This document shows, piece after piece, positions 16,533-61,055 of a DNA stretch of 64,000 nucleotides. The stretch comes from Podarcis melisellensis (Eukaryota). The notes under the pieces were generated by a model, which had not been told where the DNA came from, searched no databases, and saw only the letters and a program-made list of their open reading frames with translations. Location: the NCBI GenBank assembly GCA_964234715.1, contig OZ174281.1. One strand, written 5' to 3'. Within the stretch, counting starts at the first letter, position 1; each line of letters opens with the position of its first letter. The translations under genes and the position numbers were made by a program.

Positions 16533-16885
16533 GGGATGTGGGTGGCGCTGGGGTTTAAATCACAGAGCCTAGGACTTGCCGATCAGAAGGTCAGCGGTTC
16601 GAATCCCTGCGATGGGGCGAGCTCGCGTTGCTTGGTCCCTGCTCCTGCCAACCTAGCAGTTCAAAAGAACGTCAAAGTGCAAATAGATAAATGGGTACCA
16701 TTCCGACAGGAAGGTAAACAGCGTTTTTGTGCGCTGCTCTGGTTTGCCAGAAGCGGCTTAGTCATGCTGGCCACATGACCCGGAAGCTGTATGCCGGCTC
16801 CCTCGGCCAATAAAGCGAGATGAGCGCCGCAACCCCAAAGTCGGCCACGACTGGACCTAATGGTCAGGGGTTCCTTTACCTTTAC
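16533..16885 (+). mobile_element. Sauria SINE (full length), abutting the assembly gap
   Basis: GGGATGTGGGTGGCGCTG...GGTTCGAATCC...CCTTTACCTTTA. Confidence 0.9.
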
Positions 16886-16888
16886 CAC

Positions 16889-17064
16889 NNNNNNNNNNNN
16901 NNNNNNNNNNNNNNNNNNNNNNNNNNNNNNNNNNNNNNNNNNNNNNNNNNNNNNNNNNNNNNNNNNNNNNNNNNNNNNNNNNNNNNNNNNNNNNNNNNNN
17001 NNNNNNNNNNNNNNNNNNNNNNNNNNNNNNNNNNNNNNNNNNNNNNNNNNNNNNNNNNNNNNNN
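16889..17064. other. Assembly gap (176 N)
   Basis: Run of N. Confidence 0.99.
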
Positions 17065-18061: not shown

Positions 18062-18329
18062 TAAAGGTAAAGGTAAAGGGACCCTTGACCATTAGGTCCA
18101 GTTGTGACCGACTCTGGGGTTGCGGCGCTCATCTTGCTTTATTGGCCGAGGGAGCCGGCATCCAGCTTCCAGGTCATGTGGCCAGCATGACTAAGCCGCT
18201 TCTGGTGAACCAGAGCAGCGCACGAACCCCTGTTTACCTTCCCACCGGAGCAGTACCTATTTATCTACTTGCGCTTTGACATGCTTTTGAACTGTTAGGT
18301 TGGCAGGAGCAGGGACCGAGCAACGGGAG
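18062..18329 (-). mobile_element. Sauria SINE (5'-truncated)
   Basis: AAAGGTAAAGGTAAAGGGACCC tail and body homologous to the other copies; head missing. Confidence 0.88.
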
Positions 18330-21300: not shown

Positions 21301-21413
21301 GGGACCCTCAATACTTTTGTAATACCCACCCTTCTCAAAAGTGAGATTTTATTCCAGGTGGGCCTTCGATAGCTCCAGAGAACAGAAATGTGTTTGCATT
21401 ATGAACAGCTTTA

Positions 21414-21655
21414 CAGTGGTACCTCGGGTTACATATGCTTCAGGTTACATACGCTTCAGGTTACACACTCCACTAAGCCAGAAATAGTGCTTCAGGTTAA
21501 GAACTTTGCTTCAGGATAAGAACAGAAATCATGCTCCAGCGGTGCAGCGGCAGCAGGAGGCCCCATTAGCTAAAGTGGTGCTTCAGGTTAAGAACAGTTT
21601 CAGGTTAAGTACAGACCTCCGGAACGAATTAAGTACTTAACCCGAGGTACCACTG
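21414..21655. mobile_element. Tc1/mariner (Tigger-like) MITE, family B
   Basis: TA|CAGTGGTACCTCGGGTTA ... TAACCCGAGGTACCACTG|TA; internal (GC)TTCAGGTTA repeats. Confidence 0.88.
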
Positions 21656-21819
21656 TACTGCCATTAACTCTCTTTTTTGAATGGGACATGTTCATAGTTT
21701 TGCAGAGAACAAGTGCTTCAGATTATTAAGTTAGTGTTTTCCTGACATGCTTCTATACATATCCTCCGACAGGCACAACTTAACTTTCAACCCTCAAAAG
21801 AATTCCCAAGTCATCCTTT

Positions 21820-21950
21820 CTCAACCTTGGGTGCCCATATGTTGTTAAACTACAACTCCTATCATGCTTGATCACTAGTTCTGCCAGCCAGGGATTATGG
21901 GGGTTGTAGTCCAACAGCATCTGGGGACCCAATGTTGAGAAAGGCTCTGC
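21820..21950. mobile_element. Old short hAT-like repeat (ACTACAACTC...GGGGTTGTAGTCC family); similar relics near 4090, 12420, 26980, 30690, 33625, 38450, 38620, 40450, 53140, 56520, 59990
   Basis: Recurrent degenerate palindromic motif of about 120 bp. Confidence 0.55.
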
Positions 21951-22742
21951 TAAGGTGTTTAGAACCATAAACATGTATCTTAATACAATACAAAATTCTT
22001 ATAGTCACTCAAAATATAACTTCAAAACAAATATTAACAAATGATTAAAAGCTTGGTGAAATAATAATGTATTAGTCAACTCGAACCTATCTCACATAAA
22101 TTTTGTGAGGCTAGAGCAGTGTTTCCCAACCGGTGTTCCGCGGCACACTAGTGTGCCGCGGAGCCTTGCCTGGTGTGCCGTGGGAGGGAGGCGGGCGAGA
22201 GGCGGGGCGGCAGCGGCGAGGATCCGCGTCGAGCCGGGGGCGGCTCCGCGGTGGCGGTGCCGAGGTTTCTCTCTCCATTCTCCCCTCACACACACACACA
22301 GGAAATAACACAGGATCAGCTGACAGGACCCGGCCAATGGGGCGGCGGCGGGGCAGCGCGCGCAAAAGGGAGGAGCGCGAGACAGCGGACGAGGAGGAGG
22401 CCGGCATGTCCGGGCAGCAGCATGGAGCCTTGCATGTCCTTTCAGCCCCGCACCCACCGCAGACCCCTTCCTATGCCACTGGTAGCTAGGCGAGGCGGGG
22501 GGCACTGGGCGCCACACCTCGGCGCCTGCAGCGTGCCTGAGCCATGCGTCTGCGGGCGAACTGCCTGCAAGCTCCGCTCTGGCCTCTGCCCACCGCCTCA
22601 GCCTCCCTACAGCTGAGGGGGAGGCTGCAGCGAGGCTCCACGCAGCGTGCCCTGCCATGGCTCGCCCCCATGGCACTCGCCCCTGGCTGCAGGACGCGCG
22701 CGCCGCCCCGGGCCCCTGAGCGGCTAGCTGCGCCGCTGCGCT

Positions 22743-22832
22743 GAGCGCAAGGAATACGTCCTCTCCGAGTTCGGCGTCGTCTTCGTGGGCAGCGCAAACC
22801 GCATCTCCAGCTTCGGGTGGAACTTTGGCCAG
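22743..22832 (+). pseudogene. Captured transglutaminase (TGM3/TGM2-family) exon fragment with native splice donor
   Basis: Translates ERKEYVLSEFGVVFVGSANRISSFGWNFGQ|gtaggg, matching the transglutaminase core-domain motif ER.EYV....G.I..GS...I....WNFGQ, which ends at an exon junction. In-frame stop upstream at 22725; no in-frame ATG. Confidence 0.88.
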
Positions 22833-23205
22833 GTAGGGGGAAGCCTTTGGGCGGGGGGGGGTGGAGACCGGGGTGGGGAGGGGTTAGGAGAGACGCTACC
22901 GGCGCTGTCCAGAAATGCCCAGAGCAACTGGAGCTCAGCTACGCGCACACATGCGCCCTCCAAATCCCGTTTCCCACCCCTTTCTCAAAAGAAGAGAGAA
23001 AAAATGGGTCCTGGGTGTGAAACCAAAGGACCTTTCCAGCTCCTCCTCAATTCTAGGTGTGGATGGCAATGCCTCGTGTCTCCTCCCCCGCGACCAGAGC
23101 ACACTTCCTAGGCTGGTTGGACGGTCCCTGGGGGTCTTCGGGTTGCCATATTTTGAAGAGCAAAAAACAGGACACATTTGTCGACTTCTGCTTTTAGCTA
23201 TGGAT

Positions 23206-23353
23206 CAGTGGCCTAGCGTGGGGGGTGCAGGGGGGGCCCGGCCACACCGGGCGCAACATCTGGGGGTTAGTGTTAGGGGGCGCAAATCCACGGGTTAGGG
23301 GGCGCAAATTACTTGCATTGCCCCGGGTGCTGACAACCCACGCTACGCCACTG
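23206..23353. mobile_element. Small TIR element nested in, or captured by, the Pack-hAT
   Basis: Ends CAGTGGCCTAGCGTGGG / CCCACGCTACGCCACTG (16/17 inverted match); internal direct repeat GTTAGGGGGCGCAAAT x2; no TSD seen. Confidence 0.65.
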
Positions 23354-24011
23354 CGGCCCTGAACGAGCAGGAGAAGGAGCTCAAGTGACGCTGCGCGCTG
23401 ACGTCACGGGGCTGTAATGGTGGTGTGCCTCGATATTTTTTTCATCAAACAAGTGTGCCTTTGCCCAAAAAAGGTTGGGAAACACTGGGCTAGAGTGCAA
23501 GAGTACCATGTGTGCCCCCTTGGATTCCTCTGGGGGAAAGCCTGGGATGCCAAAGTGATAAGTGAGTTTTCTGAGCAGGCATTAATATTACGTCGCAAGC
23601 TTTTGTTTTTTTTATTTTAAATCAATTGAGTGATTGTTGCTTACCATAAAATACAATAACTGGTGGAATGTGGTAATGATGCTTAACATATAGTGTGTGT
23701 CGAATGGATAGAGCATGTCACAAATAATTTTGGTAATCCTTACAACTGTTCTGTAACATAGCTTAATATTATCCCCATCTTGCAGTGGGAGTGAGGTACT
23801 GAGGCTTGGAGAATAGTCGCTTGTCTAAGGGCCACCTAGGGAGTGTTGGGGAACATGGAGGGTAACTGGATGGAGTGAAGGAAGGAGAAGCAGCAAGAAT
23901 GGAATCCATATGAGTAACTTCATGTGGTGCTCTGGATTAGGAAAATTGATCAATGCTTCTCTGAAGTCTGCTCATAAAGGAAAAAGAAATGATTGCAGCC
24001 ACAGAGGAGTA

Positions 24012-24376
24012 AAGGTAAAGGTAAAGGTACCCCTGCCCGTACGGGCCAGTCTTGACAGACTCTGGGGTTGTGCGCCCATCTCACTTAAGAGGCCAGGGGC
24101 CAGCGCTGTCCGGAGACACTTCCGGGTCACGTGGCCAGCGTGACAAAGCTGCATCTGGCGAGCCAGAGCCGCACACGGAAACGCCGTTTACCTTCCCGCT
24201 GGTAAGCGGTCCCTATTTATCTACTTGCACCCGGAGGTGCTTTCGAACTGCTAGGTTGGCAGGCGCTGGGACCGAGCAGCGGGAGCGCACCCCGCCGCAG
24301 GGATTCGAACCGCCGACCTTTCAATCGGCAAGTCCTAGGCGCTGAGGCTTTAACCCACAGCGCCACCTGCGTCCCC
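24012..24376 (-). mobile_element. Sauria SINE, young subfamily
   Basis: CpG-rich, TSD CCACAGAGGAGTA; same subfamily as 42809-43164. Confidence 0.92.
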
Positions 24377-50578: not shown

Positions 50579-50843
50579 TCAGCGGGTGGCACTGTGGTCT
50601 AAACCACTGAGTGGCTTGACCTTGCTGATTGGAAGGTCGGTGGTTTGAATCCGCGAGTTGGGGTGAGCTCCTGTTGCTTTGTCCGAGTTTTCTGCCAACC
50701 TAGCAGTTCGAAAGCACACCAGTGTAAGTAGATAATGACCCGGAAGCTGTACGCCGGCTCCCTTGGCCAATAAAGCGAGATGAGTGCCGCAACCTCAGAG
50801 TCGGTCATGACTGGACCTAATGGTCAGGGGTCCCCTTACCTTT
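50579..50843 (+). mobile_element. Sauria SINE with internal deletion
   Basis: Head and tail present; central part deleted at GTAGATAA|TGACCCGG. Confidence 0.85.
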
Positions 50844-50962
50844 ATAAAAGAAAGATTAATAATATTTGAAGGATGTTTGGTGGGGATGGAATTTCCATGC
50901 GGCAGCTAGAAAAAGTTAGAAGAGCCATGACTGAAGTTCTAATATAAATAAATAAAAATAAC

Positions 50963-51335
50963 GTAAAGGTAAAGGACCCCTGACAGCTAAGTCCAGTTGC
51001 GAACGACTCGGGGGTTGTGGCGCTCATCTCGTTTTACTGGCCGAAGGAGCCGACGTTTGTCTGCAGACAGTTTTTCTGGGTCATGTGTCTAGCATGACTA
51101 AGCCACTTTTGGTGCAACGGAACACCGAAACCAGAGCAGCGCATGGAAACGCCATTTACCCTCCCACCGGAGCGGTACCTATTTATCTACTTGCACTTTG
51201 ATGTGCTTTCGAACTGCTAGGTTGGCAGGAGCTGGACAGCGCAACGGGAGCTCACCCCATCGCGGGGATTCGAACCACCTACCTTCCAATCGGCAAGCCC
51301 TAGGCTCATTGGTTTAGACCACAACGCCACCCACA
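50963..51335 (-). mobile_element. Sauria SINE (near full length)
   Basis: GTAAAGGTAAAGGACCCC tail; reverse B box GATTCGAACC. Confidence 0.88.
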
Positions 51336-55279: not shown

Positions 55280-55474
55280 ATGGCAGCAGCTTACCTAGAC
55301 CCAAACTTGAATCACACGCCAAGCTCAAGCACAAAGACGCACCTCAGTTCTGGGATGGAGCGTTCTCCTGGGACAATGGAACGAGTCCTAAAGGTTTTCC
55401 ATTATTTTGAAAGTAACAGTGAGCCGACAACATGGGCCAGTATTATACGTCACGGGGATGCTACAGATGTTTGG
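55280..55474 (+). CDS. PTK2: PTK2/FAK first canonical coding exon, codons 1-65 (whole exon 55248-55474, including 32 nt upstream of the ATG)
   Basis: Translates MAAAYLDPNLNHTPSSSTKTHLSSGMERSPGTMERVLKVFHYFESNSEPTTWASIIRHGDATDVW, the FAK N-terminus and start of the FERM F1 lobe. Acceptor ttttttccttcctcccatttcag|55248; donor 55474|gtaagc (phase 0); ATG in AAAACCATGG Kozak context. Confidence 0.98.
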
Positions 55475-59294: not shown

Positions 59295-59461
59295 GGCATA
59301 ATCCAGAAGATAGTAGATAGTCACAAAGTAAAAAATGTAGCCTGTTACGGTTTACGGCTCAGTCACCTGCAGTCAGAGGAAGTTCATTGGCTTCATCCAG
59401 ACATGGGAGTGTCCAACGTGAGGGAGAAATTTGAACTATCCCACGCGCCGGAGGAATGGAA
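59295..59461 (+). CDS. PTK2: PTK2/FAK second canonical coding exon (167 nt, FERM domain)
   Basis: Acceptor tttctcttttttag|; translates GIIQKIVDSHKVKNVACYGLRLSHLQSEEVHWLHPDMGVSNVREKFELSHAPEEW(K); donor aa|gtaagg (phase 2); in frame with the previous exon. Not in the supplied ORF track. Confidence 0.98.
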
Positions 59462-60708: not shown

Positions 60709-61055
60709 AAAGGTAAAGGGGACCCCTGACTATTAGGTCCAGTCGTGACCGACTCTGGGGTTGCGGCGCTCATCTCGCTTTATTGGCCGAGGGAGCCGGC
60801 GTACAGCTTCCGGGTCATGTGGCCAGCATGACTAAGCCGCTCCTGGTGAACCAGAGCAGCGCACGGAAACACCGTTTACCTTCCCGCCGGAACCTATTTA
60901 TTTACTTGCACTTTGACGTGCTTTCAAATTGCTAGGTGGGCAGGAGCTGGGACCGAGCAACGGGAGCTCACCCCATCGCAGGGATTCAAACCGCCGACCT
61001 TCTGATCGGCAAGTCCTAGGCTCTGTGGTTTAACCCACAGCGCCACCCACATCCC
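60709..61055 (-). mobile_element. Sauria SINE (full length)
   Basis: TSD CTAGGTCCTCATTAA (60694-60708, 61058-61072). Confidence 0.92.

What the first reader, a model, noticed from the sequence alone, without database searches (positions are those of the whole stretch)
22740..22890. Transglutaminase (TGM3-like) exon fragment captured with its splice donor
Seen: 30 uninterrupted codons ERKEYVLSEFGVVFVGSANRISSFGWNFGQ, followed by GTAGGG and G-rich intron-like sequence. Known: WNFGQ is a hallmark motif of the transglutaminase core domain and ends an exon; VFVGS.NRI...GWNFGQ best fits epidermal TGM3 as I recall it. A retained exon-intron junction indicates DNA-level capture rather than retroposition. 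The in-frame TAG at 22725 and the absence of an ATG mean it is not translated as it stands. The ORF track shows only the last half.
Basis: partly seen in the sequence, partly recalled or inferred. Interest (0 to 1): 0.8.

Follow-up and report, generated by a model that had tools for sequence, protein, structure and literature searches.

The report
Transposon-captured transglutaminase exon piece in lizard
A small cut-and-paste (hAT-type) transposon in a wall-lizard-like genome picked up the end of one exon plus about 520 bases of intron from a skin-type transglutaminase (TGM3-like) gene and spread it to an estimated 13-37 copies, one of which sits upstream of the PTK2 coding exons; it is a clean but ordinary case of gene-fragment capture, with no sign of function.

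Summary

**What the stretch is.** Window 22743-22832 reads ERKEYVLSEFGVVFVGSANRISSFGWNFGQ and is followed by GTAGGG. The best solved-structure match is human TGM3 (E 7e-8). The stretch is 31/31 identical to the Podarcis muralis TGM3-like protein.

**Extent of the match.** At DNA level, window 22739-23354 matches that gene at 96.6%. It covers the last 94 of the 119 bases of the exon plus about 520 bases of the downstream intron. This is a DNA-level copy, not a retrocopy.

**Not a gene here.** No other TGM exon lies in the 64 kb.

**The carrier.** The piece sits inside a 1371-base non-autonomous hAT-type element (22117-23487). The element has perfect 15-base terminal inverted repeats and a perfect 8-base target duplication. 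It lies about 32 kb upstream of the PTK2 start-codon exon.

**Copy number.** Contig depths suggest that the cargo is present about 13-22 times in one species and about 23-37 times in a related one.

**Right breakpoint.** It falls 1 base past the end of a small MITE resident in the TGM3 intron. This suggests that transposase cleavage took part.

**Function.** Exon and intron have diverged alike, there is an in-frame stop upstream, and no expression was seen. It is most likely a neutral passenger.

**Class.** It belongs to the known Pack-TIR (Pack-hAT) kind. The scan has unchecked notes of other Pack-hAT candidates in this genome with different cargos. None of them mentions TGM3.

The parts
22109..22116 (.). 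Left copy of the 8-base target-site duplication, GGCTAGAG
   Evidence: Identical to 23488-23495 and directly abuts the TIR.
22117..23487 (+). Non-autonomous hAT-type element (1371 bases) carrying captured host DNA (Pack-hAT)
   Evidence: Perfect 15-base TIRs and an 8-base TSD. GC is 56% in surroundings of about 40%. No Pfam domain in its ORFs. Junction contigs 21917-22138 and 23466-24032 lie at single-copy depth with 0 differences.
22117..22131 (+). Left terminal inverted repeat, CAGTGTTTCCCAACC (starts CAGTG, which fits the hAT YARNG rule)
   Evidence: Exact reverse complement of 23473-23487. These are the only two matches in 64 kb, against 0.18 expected even with 2 mismatches allowed. GTGTGCC-type subterminal repeats follow (D6, D7, I6-I8).
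22132..22410 (+). Left arm or backbone of the transposon family (high copy)
   Evidence: Summed contig depth is 22,000-481,000 against about 85 for single-copy flanks in run X1.
22411..22738 (.). Cargo piece 1: GC-rich, CpG-rich DNA of unknown origin
   Evidence: GC 0.69-0.75, CpG o/e 0.57-0.95. Main contig depth is 1763 against about 85, so about 21 copies. No match in the TGM3 locus. No Pfam hit.
22739..22832 (+). Captured 3' 94 bases of the 119-base TGM3-like exon (aa 147-177 of P0035). The first 25 bases and the acceptor are missing.
   Evidence: 92/94 identical to L004 8004-8097, and both differences are silent. 31/31 aa identical to P. muralis P0035. PDB best hit is TGM3 at E 7e-8.
22833..23354 (+). 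Captured part of the intron downstream of that exon, beginning with the GT donor
   Evidence: Collinear with L004 8098-8588. There are 18 mismatches in 487 aligned bases plus small indels and a local duplication inside 23265-23309 (repeat units 23272-23287 and 23294-23309).
23198..23205 (.). Left target duplication (CTATGGAT) of the small MITE, carried over from the TGM3 intron
   Evidence: In L004 the MITE is flanked on both sides by CTATGGAT. In the window only the left copy, plus the first C of the right copy, is present.
23206..23353 (.). 148-base hAT-like MITE resident in the TGM3 intron and captured along with it. Its right end marks the right breakpoint of the captured piece.
   Evidence: 17-base TIRs CAGTGGCCTAGCGTGGG / CCCACGCTACGCCACTG (I2). 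Very high depth, up to 4.5 million summed. Homology to TGM3 stops 1 base after its terminus.
23355..23472 (+). Right arm of the transposon family
   Evidence: No homology to the TGM3 locus. Depth is comparable to the left terminus. Holds GTGTGCC subterminal repeats (D6/I8).
23473..23487 (-). Right terminal inverted repeat
23488..23495 (.). Right copy of the target-site duplication, GGCTAGAG
55280..55471 (+). Context: PTK2 (FAK) start-codon exon (MAAAYLDPNLNHTP...HGDATDV). The exon end is approximate.
   Evidence: Motif scan of the six-frame translation. The next exon (..EVHWLH..) lies near 59300-59420.

Best explanation
The 30-codon stretch is a piece of a lacertid TGM3-like gene. It comprises the last 94 bases of the gene's 119-base exon 4 equivalent plus about 520 bases of the following intron, which includes a small MITE that lives in that intron.

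This piece was copied as genomic DNA into the interior of a non-autonomous hAT-type transposon, next to a second, GC-rich cargo piece of unknown origin. The composite Pack-hAT element was then mobilised by a hAT transposase supplied in trans and multiplied to an estimated 13-37 copies in at least two related lizard species. The copy in this window inserted about 32 kb upstream of the PTK2 start-codon exon, in the same orientation, and made an 8-base target duplication.

The fragment is a non-coding passenger. It lacks the exon's 5' end and acceptor, has an in-frame stop just upstream, and has drifted at the same rate in its exon and intron parts.

Shown: the identity of the parent, the extent and breakpoints of the captured piece, the TE boundaries, and the absence of other TGM exons. 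Shown indirectly, by contig depth only: the multicopy state.

Inferred: capture happened during repair or replication of the transposon (gap filling with template switching). Transposase cleavage at the intronic MITE's end defined the right breakpoint, either by run-off copying of a cleaved donor or by a later adjacent deletion.
For: Exon identity: (31/31 to P. muralis P0035).

Exon plus intron collinearity: window 22739-23354 matches L004 8004-8588 with 561/581 aligned bases identical.

Exon structure of the parent, and the conserved GQ|GT boundary.

5' truncation of the exon by 25 bases.

TE boundaries: perfect 15-base TIRs, a perfect 8-base TSD, subterminal repeats, no coding capacity.

No other TGM exon in the window.

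Multicopy: in run X1 the cargo contigs have depth 1089-1819 against 73-88 for single-copy flank and junction contigs. In run X5 (another species) the figures are 159-262 against 5-10. The cargo contigs differ from the window at only 1-2 positions per 200-300 bases.

Neutral decay: 2/94 exon against 18/487 intron mismatches, 11 of the 20 in CpG context. Three of the differences (22796, 22906, 23054) are private to this copy, because the family contigs carry the parental base.

Right breakpoint 1 base past the MITE terminus.

Kind already described in animals: PMC8277862.
Against: - Copy number rests on contig k-mer depth, which the tool itself warns is not a copy number. No second full copy was read.
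- The species of the window is coded, so the parent locus used (P. muralis) may be the orthologue rather than the actual donor. Some of the 3.4% divergence may therefore be species divergence.
- The origin of cargo piece 1 is unknown, so microhomology at the left junction cannot be judged. At most CGC, 22739-22741, is shared.
- The MITE-terminus coincidence is a post-hoc observation (roughly 0.4% by chance) from one element.
- Expression was examined in only about 12% of one RNA run, from the other species.
Confidence: 0.9

Rival explanations
1. It is a genuine exon of a functional or nested transglutaminase gene with long introns.
For: The open frame, the perfect donor and 100% amino-acid identity to a real TGM3-like protein.
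Against: No other TGM exon in 64 kb on either strand. The exon lacks its first 25 bases and its acceptor, and a stop sits 15 bases upstream. It lies inside TIR/TSD boundaries. An intact 688-aa parent gene lies at a different locus (L004), with no transposon arms of this family in it. The window itself holds PTK2 exons.
Confidence: 0.01
2. It is a retrocopy or processed-pseudogene fragment of TGM3 mRNA.
For: None beyond the exon match.
Against: The sequence after GQ is the intron, about 520 bases at 96% identity, and not the next exon (FQDGILD.. in the gecko protein P0003).
Confidence: 0.01
3. It is a TE-independent duplication or an assembly chimera. TGM3 DNA landed by chance between two MITE ends, or was mis-joined during assembly.
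For: The best DNA run (X1) may be the sample the window was assembled from, so its junction contigs are not independent (note).
Against: Contigs spanning cargo 1 into the TGM exon (22463-22772, 22596-22822, 22423-22860) and the intron into the MITE (22907-23235, 22845-23238) occur in runs of another species and other studies, at multicopy depth. The matching TIRs and perfect TSD show that the whole 1371 bases moved as one unit.
Confidence: 0.03
4. The captured piece has been put to use in one of two ways. Its GT donor, with the CpG-rich cargo upstream, may serve as an alternative first exon or cassette of PTK2. Alternatively, the 13-37 copies may yield small RNAs that act on the TGM3-like parent.
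For: It has the same orientation as PTK2 and an intact consensus donor CAG|GTAGGG. Its CpG o/e is up to 0.99. Tan et al. report that many animal Pack-TIRs are transcribed as chimeras with neighbours (PMC8277862).
Against: RNA run X23 gives about 0-1 reads of depth over 22512-23117 while the high-copy ends are covered. No loose ends at 22832 are listed. The 'RNA?' run X15 has the same terminus-to-cargo depth ratio (about 270) as the run X1 (whose kind is listed as '?'), so it is probably low-coverage DNA. Exon and intron have decayed alike.
Confidence: 0.08

Closest known systems
Pack-TIR / Pack-hAT elements of metazoans (Tan et al. 2021, Nat Commun 12:4280, PMC8277862)
   Same: A non-autonomous TIR transposon with host-derived DNA between its arms. 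hAT is the commonest carrier (208 of 370). The multicopy cases are interchromosomal and GC-rich. Gap-filling or template-switch origin is proposed.
   Different: The text of that paper mentions no lizard. Here the cargo is a mosaic of at least two pieces, it includes an exon-intron junction, and one breakpoint coincides with the terminus of a second hAT-like MITE inside the donor intron.
Pack-MULEs / Pack-TYPE transposons of plants (PMC5861414, PMC8903248)
   Same: Capture of gene fragments, often GC-rich 5' parts with introns, followed by amplification. Most are non-coding passengers.
   Different: Different superfamily (Mutator or CACTA, with 9-base or 3-base TSDs) and kingdom. Copy numbers per genome are far larger in plants.
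Helitron gene capture in vespertilionid bats (PMC4224331)
   Same: DNA-level capture and amplification of promoter and exon fragments, introns included, in a vertebrate.
   Different: Rolling-circle elements have no TIRs or TSDs. Capture is by read-through of the terminus, not by repair.
Vertebrate transglutaminase 3 (human TGM3, PDB 1L9M, 8OXV)
   Same: The fragment aligns to residues 150-179 with 21/30 identical. The exon boundary after WNFGQ is the same.
   Different: Only 31 of about 690 residues are present, with no catalytic Cys/His/Asp. It is not a protein-coding member.

Membership tests
hAT-superfamily non-autonomous transposon | Terminal inverted repeats of about 10-25 bases beginning YARNG | tested here: met
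   15/15 complementary CAGTGTTTCCCAACC at 22117 and 23487. The YARNG rule is from my own knowledge of the superfamily.
hAT-superfamily non-autonomous transposon | 8-base target-site duplication | tested here: met
   GGCTAGAG on both sides, 8/8.
hAT-superfamily non-autonomous transposon | An autonomous partner with a hAT (DDE, BED-zinc-finger, hATC) transposase and matching ends | not testable with these tools
   No eukaryotic genome search was available. There is no transposase ORF in the element or elsewhere in the window with these TIRs.
Pack-TIR (transduplicating TIR element) | Internal segment derived from a host gene whose parental copy lies elsewhere | tested here: met
   22739-23354 matches the P. 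muralis TGM3-like locus L004 8004-8588 at 96.6%. That locus has no arms of this transposon.
Pack-TIR (transduplicating TIR element) | Captured segment lies wholly between the transposon arms and moves with them (multiple copies or TSD) | tested here: met
   A perfect TSD surrounds the whole unit. Cargo contigs are at 13-22 times (X1) and 23-37 times (X5) single-copy depth. The depth evidence is indirect.
Transglutaminase (Transglut_N / Transglut_core / Transglut_C protein) | Catalytic core with the Cys-His-Asp triad (GQCW..., HVW.., D) | tested here: not met
   No such motifs in any frame of the window. Pfam finds no domain in the 30 aa. No other exon by tblastn.
Processed pseudogene / retrocopy | Absence of introns; exon-exon junctions | tested here: not met
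   The intron is retained.

The most novel reading that the evidence does not exclude
The right end of the captured piece lies 1 base beyond the terminus of a hAT-like MITE resident in the donor intron. That extra base could be the 1-base flank that hAT cleavage leaves on an excised end, a point I recall from Hermes biochemistry.

This would mean that capture in this family is not random template switching. It would be seeded by transposase cuts at resident MITEs in genes. Either a repair polymerase ran off a cleaved donor, or an abortive excision deleted the adjacent DNA.

The scan's unchecked notes list several other Pack-hAT candidates in the same genome. If those are real, a currently or recently active hAT family in wall lizards may be shuffling exon-plus-donor modules at a rate unusual for amniotes, by a mechanism that could be read directly from breakpoints.
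Probability: 0.2. Interest if true: 0.6.

Novelty: new member of a known kind. Interest (0 to 1): 0.4.

Why it matters
This is a nucleotide-resolved example of gene-fragment capture by a cut-and-paste transposon in an amniote. The parent gene, both breakpoints and later amplification are all identified.

Multicopy Pack-TIRs are reported as rare in animals. A squamate case, possibly one of several in this genome, adds a lineage in which exon shuffling by DNA transposons can be studied.

For annotation it matters in a plain way. The ORF must not be called a transglutaminase gene or exon, and its copies elsewhere in the genome will produce the same false signal.

The intact splice donor, placed in sense orientation upstream of the PTK2 coding exons, is a possible but unsupported source of chimeric transcripts.

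Tried and rejected
1. Motif scan for further TGM hallmarks (GQCW, HVWNE, LDATPQ and others) in six frames. Only WNFGQ was found.
2. Pfam on the 30 aa and on seven element ORFs. No hits.
3. Two word searches (search for homologous proteins) with the read-through ORF, 22728-23108 and 22728-22892, meant to fetch other copies from public contigs. Both found nothing. Other copies were therefore never read directly.
4. Comparison with the Gekko kuhli TGM3 locus and two Logan contigs. Only the exon aligns (84-86%), with no intron homology, so they are too distant to test capture. MAFFT's suggestion that 22706-22738 is a degenerate 5' exon part was dropped once the P. muralis locus showed a sharp breakpoint at 22739.
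5. A self-BLAST of the element against the window found no second copy and no similarity between 23206-23353 and the neighbouring SINE-like repeats. The joints 21657->23206 seen in contigs therefore remain unexplained.
6. I looked for a target duplication around the captured piece itself, as if it had transposed into the carrier. GCCGCTG against GGCCCTG is not convincing.
7. Run X15, guessed to be RNA, covers the cargo unspliced. I rejected it as expression evidence because its depth ratios match DNA.
8. Scan-note searches by the words 'transglutaminase/TGM3' and by sequence returned nothing.
9. Whether the insertion is present at the PTK2 site in the second species could not be read from the truncated tables.

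Full report
**1. The observation.**
Window 22743-22832 on the + strand reads ERKEYVLSEFGVVFVGSANRISSFGWNFGQ without a stop. It is followed by GTAGGG and G-rich sequence. An in-frame TAG lies at 22725 and there is no ATG in between.

A phmmer search of the 30 residues against all PDB chains puts human TGM3 (residues 150-179, 21/30 identical) first at E 7e-8. Factor XIII A follows at 2.8e-4, then TGM2 at 5e-4. Pfam sees nothing in so short a piece. The exhaustive representative search returned 15 hits at E <= 1e-3. They include a Gekko kuhli TGM3-like protein and many short ORF calls from public contigs that read the same exon through its donor (...GQ|V...). The exon end after WNFGQ is therefore conserved across amniotes.

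**2. It is not a gene here.**
tblastn of the gecko protein, of a tandem TGM protein and of the Podarcis protein against the window finds only 22740-22832. Nothing else scores below E = 0.9 on either strand. A motif scan for the catalytic hallmarks finds none. The window instead carries the start-codon exon of PTK2/FAK (MAAAYLDPNLNHTP..., from 55280) and the next exon near 59300-59420, both on the + strand.

**3. The carrier.**
The fragment lies in a GC-rich island (56% against about 40%) that is bounded by perfect 15-base inverted repeats. CAGTGTTTCCCAACC sits at 22117-22131 and its reverse complement at 23473-23487. These are the only two matches in the window, and 0.18 are expected even with two mismatches allowed. 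A perfect 8-base direct repeat, GGCTAGAG, flanks the element at 22109-22116 and 23488-23495. GTGTGCC-type subterminal repeats are present in both arms. None of seven ORFs has a Pfam domain. A CAGTG start, an 8-base TSD and no coding capacity together define a non-autonomous hAT-type element of 1371 bases. The superfamily rule is from my own knowledge; the transposase partner could not be sought.

**4. The parent gene.**
A word search seeded with the gecko protein listed squamate TGM3-like proteins. Ranking them against the window peptide showed that Podarcis muralis 'protein-glutamine gamma-glutamyltransferase E-like' (P0035, 688 aa) is 31/31 identical. The next best is 29/31.

Its locus was fetched as L004, from GCA_964188315.1. 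It has the expected exon series. The relevant exon is L004 7979-8097, 119 bases, preceded by ...tttgcag and followed by GTA.

BLASTN shows window 22739-23354 collinear with L004 8004-8588. A global realignment gives 561/581 identical bases (96.6%), made up of 2 mismatches in the 94 exon bases and 18 in the 487 aligned intron bases. There are also small indels and a 28-base extra stretch in the window (23265-23292) that belongs to a local tandem duplication (units at 23272-23287 and 23294-23309).

The captured piece is therefore the last 94 of 119 exon bases plus about 520 bases of intron. The acceptor and the first 25 exon bases are absent. The rest of the TGM3 locus shares only interspersed repeats with the window. 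The locus contains no copy of the carrier's TIR.

**5. Breakpoints.**
On the left, the window reads ...gccgctg|CGCTGAGCGC and the parent reads ...caacga|CGCGGAGCGC. The donor of the sequence to the left (22411-22738) is unknown, so microhomology cannot be scored.

On the right, the TGM3 intron contains a 148-base hAT-like MITE with TIRs CAGTGGCCTAGCGTGGG/CCCACGCTACGCCACTG. In L004 it is flanked on both sides by CTATGGAT. The window carries the left CTATGGAT, the whole MITE (23206-23353) and one further base (C). It then switches to the carrier's right arm.

A random breakpoint would fall within a base of one of the two MITE ends in roughly 0.4% of cases in a 1.4-kb intron. That is my own rough, post-hoc estimate. 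I take it as a hint that transposase cleavage at that MITE end was involved. Either it gave a donor end at which copying ran off, or it produced a later adjacent deletion.

**6. Copy number and spread.**
The stretch 22000-23600 is held by runs of four coded organisms from 11 studies.

- In run X1 (organism A), the flank and junction contigs match the window with 0 differences and have depth 73-88. The cargo contigs have depths 1763 (22413-22625), 1089 (22596-22822) and 1819 (22854-23167), which is about 13-22 times single copy.
- In run X5 (organism B), the flanks differ from the window by 1-5%. Single-copy contigs have depth 5-10 and the cargo contigs 159-262, which is about 23-37 times single copy.
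- The arms are at thousands of copies and the small MITE at tens of thousands.
- Cargo contigs differ from the window by 1-2 bases per 200-300. At 22796, 22906 and 23054 they carry the parental base, so those changes are private to this copy. Two of the three are CpG transitions.

Depth is an indirect measure and no second copy was read. Two protein word searches meant to fetch other copies found nothing.

**7. Function.**
The exon part and the intron part have diverged alike, and 11 of the 20 differences are in CpG context. This is what neutral decay gives.

In the one raw RNA run laid (organism B, about 12% of the run read), depth over 22512-23117 is 0-1, while the high-copy ends are covered. 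No loose ends at the donor are listed. The small run guessed to be RNA (X15) covers the cargo unspliced. Its terminus-to-cargo depth ratio (about 270) equals that of run X1, whose kind is listed as '?', and unique flanks are absent, so it is most likely low-coverage DNA.

I therefore read the fragment as a passenger. Use of its donor in PTK2 transcripts, or small RNAs against the parent, remain untested possibilities of low prior.

**8. Comparison with what is known.**
Tan et al. (PMC8277862) catalogued 370 Pack-TIRs in 100 animal genomes, 208 of them on hAT elements. [quoted passage not shown] The present element meets the tested criteria of that class: TIRs, TSD, host-derived interior with a parent elsewhere, and amplification. 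It is a new member of a known kind.

That paper's text mentions no lizard. A search for Podarcis together with hAT/MITE found nothing relevant.

The scan's own unchecked notes list about eight Pack-hAT candidates in this genome, this window's own element among them, and the others carry different cargos. One of them is 1372 letters long and may be another copy. None of them mentions TGM3. I did not test those notes.

**9. Limits.**
- Organism names are coded. The window is from a lacertid close to P. muralis, but the species is not known. Part of the 3.4% divergence from L004 may therefore be between species.

Noticed in passing
window 22411-22738: A second cargo piece in the same element. It is very GC- and CpG-rich (GC about 0.7, CpG o/e up to 0.95), has a CCAAT/GC-box-like stretch just upstream (22330-22400), and shows about 21 times single-copy depth. 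It has no match in the TGM3 locus and no Pfam hit. Its parent is unknown; it is possibly a captured CpG-island promoter or first exon.
   Followed up: partly
window 21412-21657: A 246-base, extremely high-copy repeat (summed depth above 10 million). It is present in the window and in organism A but precisely absent at the orthologous site in organism B: one X5 contig bridges 21411 to 21656. It is a species-specific, SINE-like insertion.
   Followed up: partly
window 24010-24300 and beyond: A very high-copy repeat. Its continuation in other copies reads GGGGATTCGAACCGCCGACCTTTCGATCGG, the reverse complement of a tRNA-like T-arm, as in squamate Sauria-type SINEs (identification from memory). Related copies also lie at about 16750-16886, 18062-18202, 50735-51108 and 60709-61055, and in the TGM3 locus.
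   Followed up: partly
window 23206-23353: A 148-base MITE with 17-base TIRs and, in the TGM3 intron, a perfect CTATGGAT duplication. Its summed contig depth of up to 4.5 million suggests tens of thousands of copies, yet there is no second copy in this 64-kb window.
   Followed up: partly
window 22264-22344: In organism B (runs X5, X15 and the RNA run X23) a family variant skips these 81 bases of the left arm (joint 22263->22345). It is an indel variant of the transposon backbone.
   Followed up: no
window 21657 joined to 23206 and to 24009-24017: Many contigs join the end of the 21412-21657 repeat directly to sequence like 23206... or 24010... BLAST shows no similarity between these window segments, so the meaning of the joints is unexplained. 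They may be composite repeats elsewhere in the genome.
   Followed up: no
window 16889-17064: A run of 176 N (assembly gap or mask). It was left untouched.
   Followed up: no
window 55280-55471 and about 59300-59420: The PTK2/FAK start-codon exon and the following FERM-domain exon, both on the + strand. The transposon lies about 32 kb upstream in the same orientation. Whether that is within a 5'UTR intron or upstream of the promoter was not determined.
   Followed up: partly
same genome, other windows (scan notes s1-498151, s1-498154, s1-501564, s1-504995, s1-504997, s1-505010, s1-501839): Unchecked first-reader notes of further hAT elements carrying captured CpG-island, first-exon or donor fragments of other genes (DCLK2, UBE2G1, CDAN1, EIF3B-like, SIX5). 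If real, capture is recurrent in this genome.
   Followed up: no
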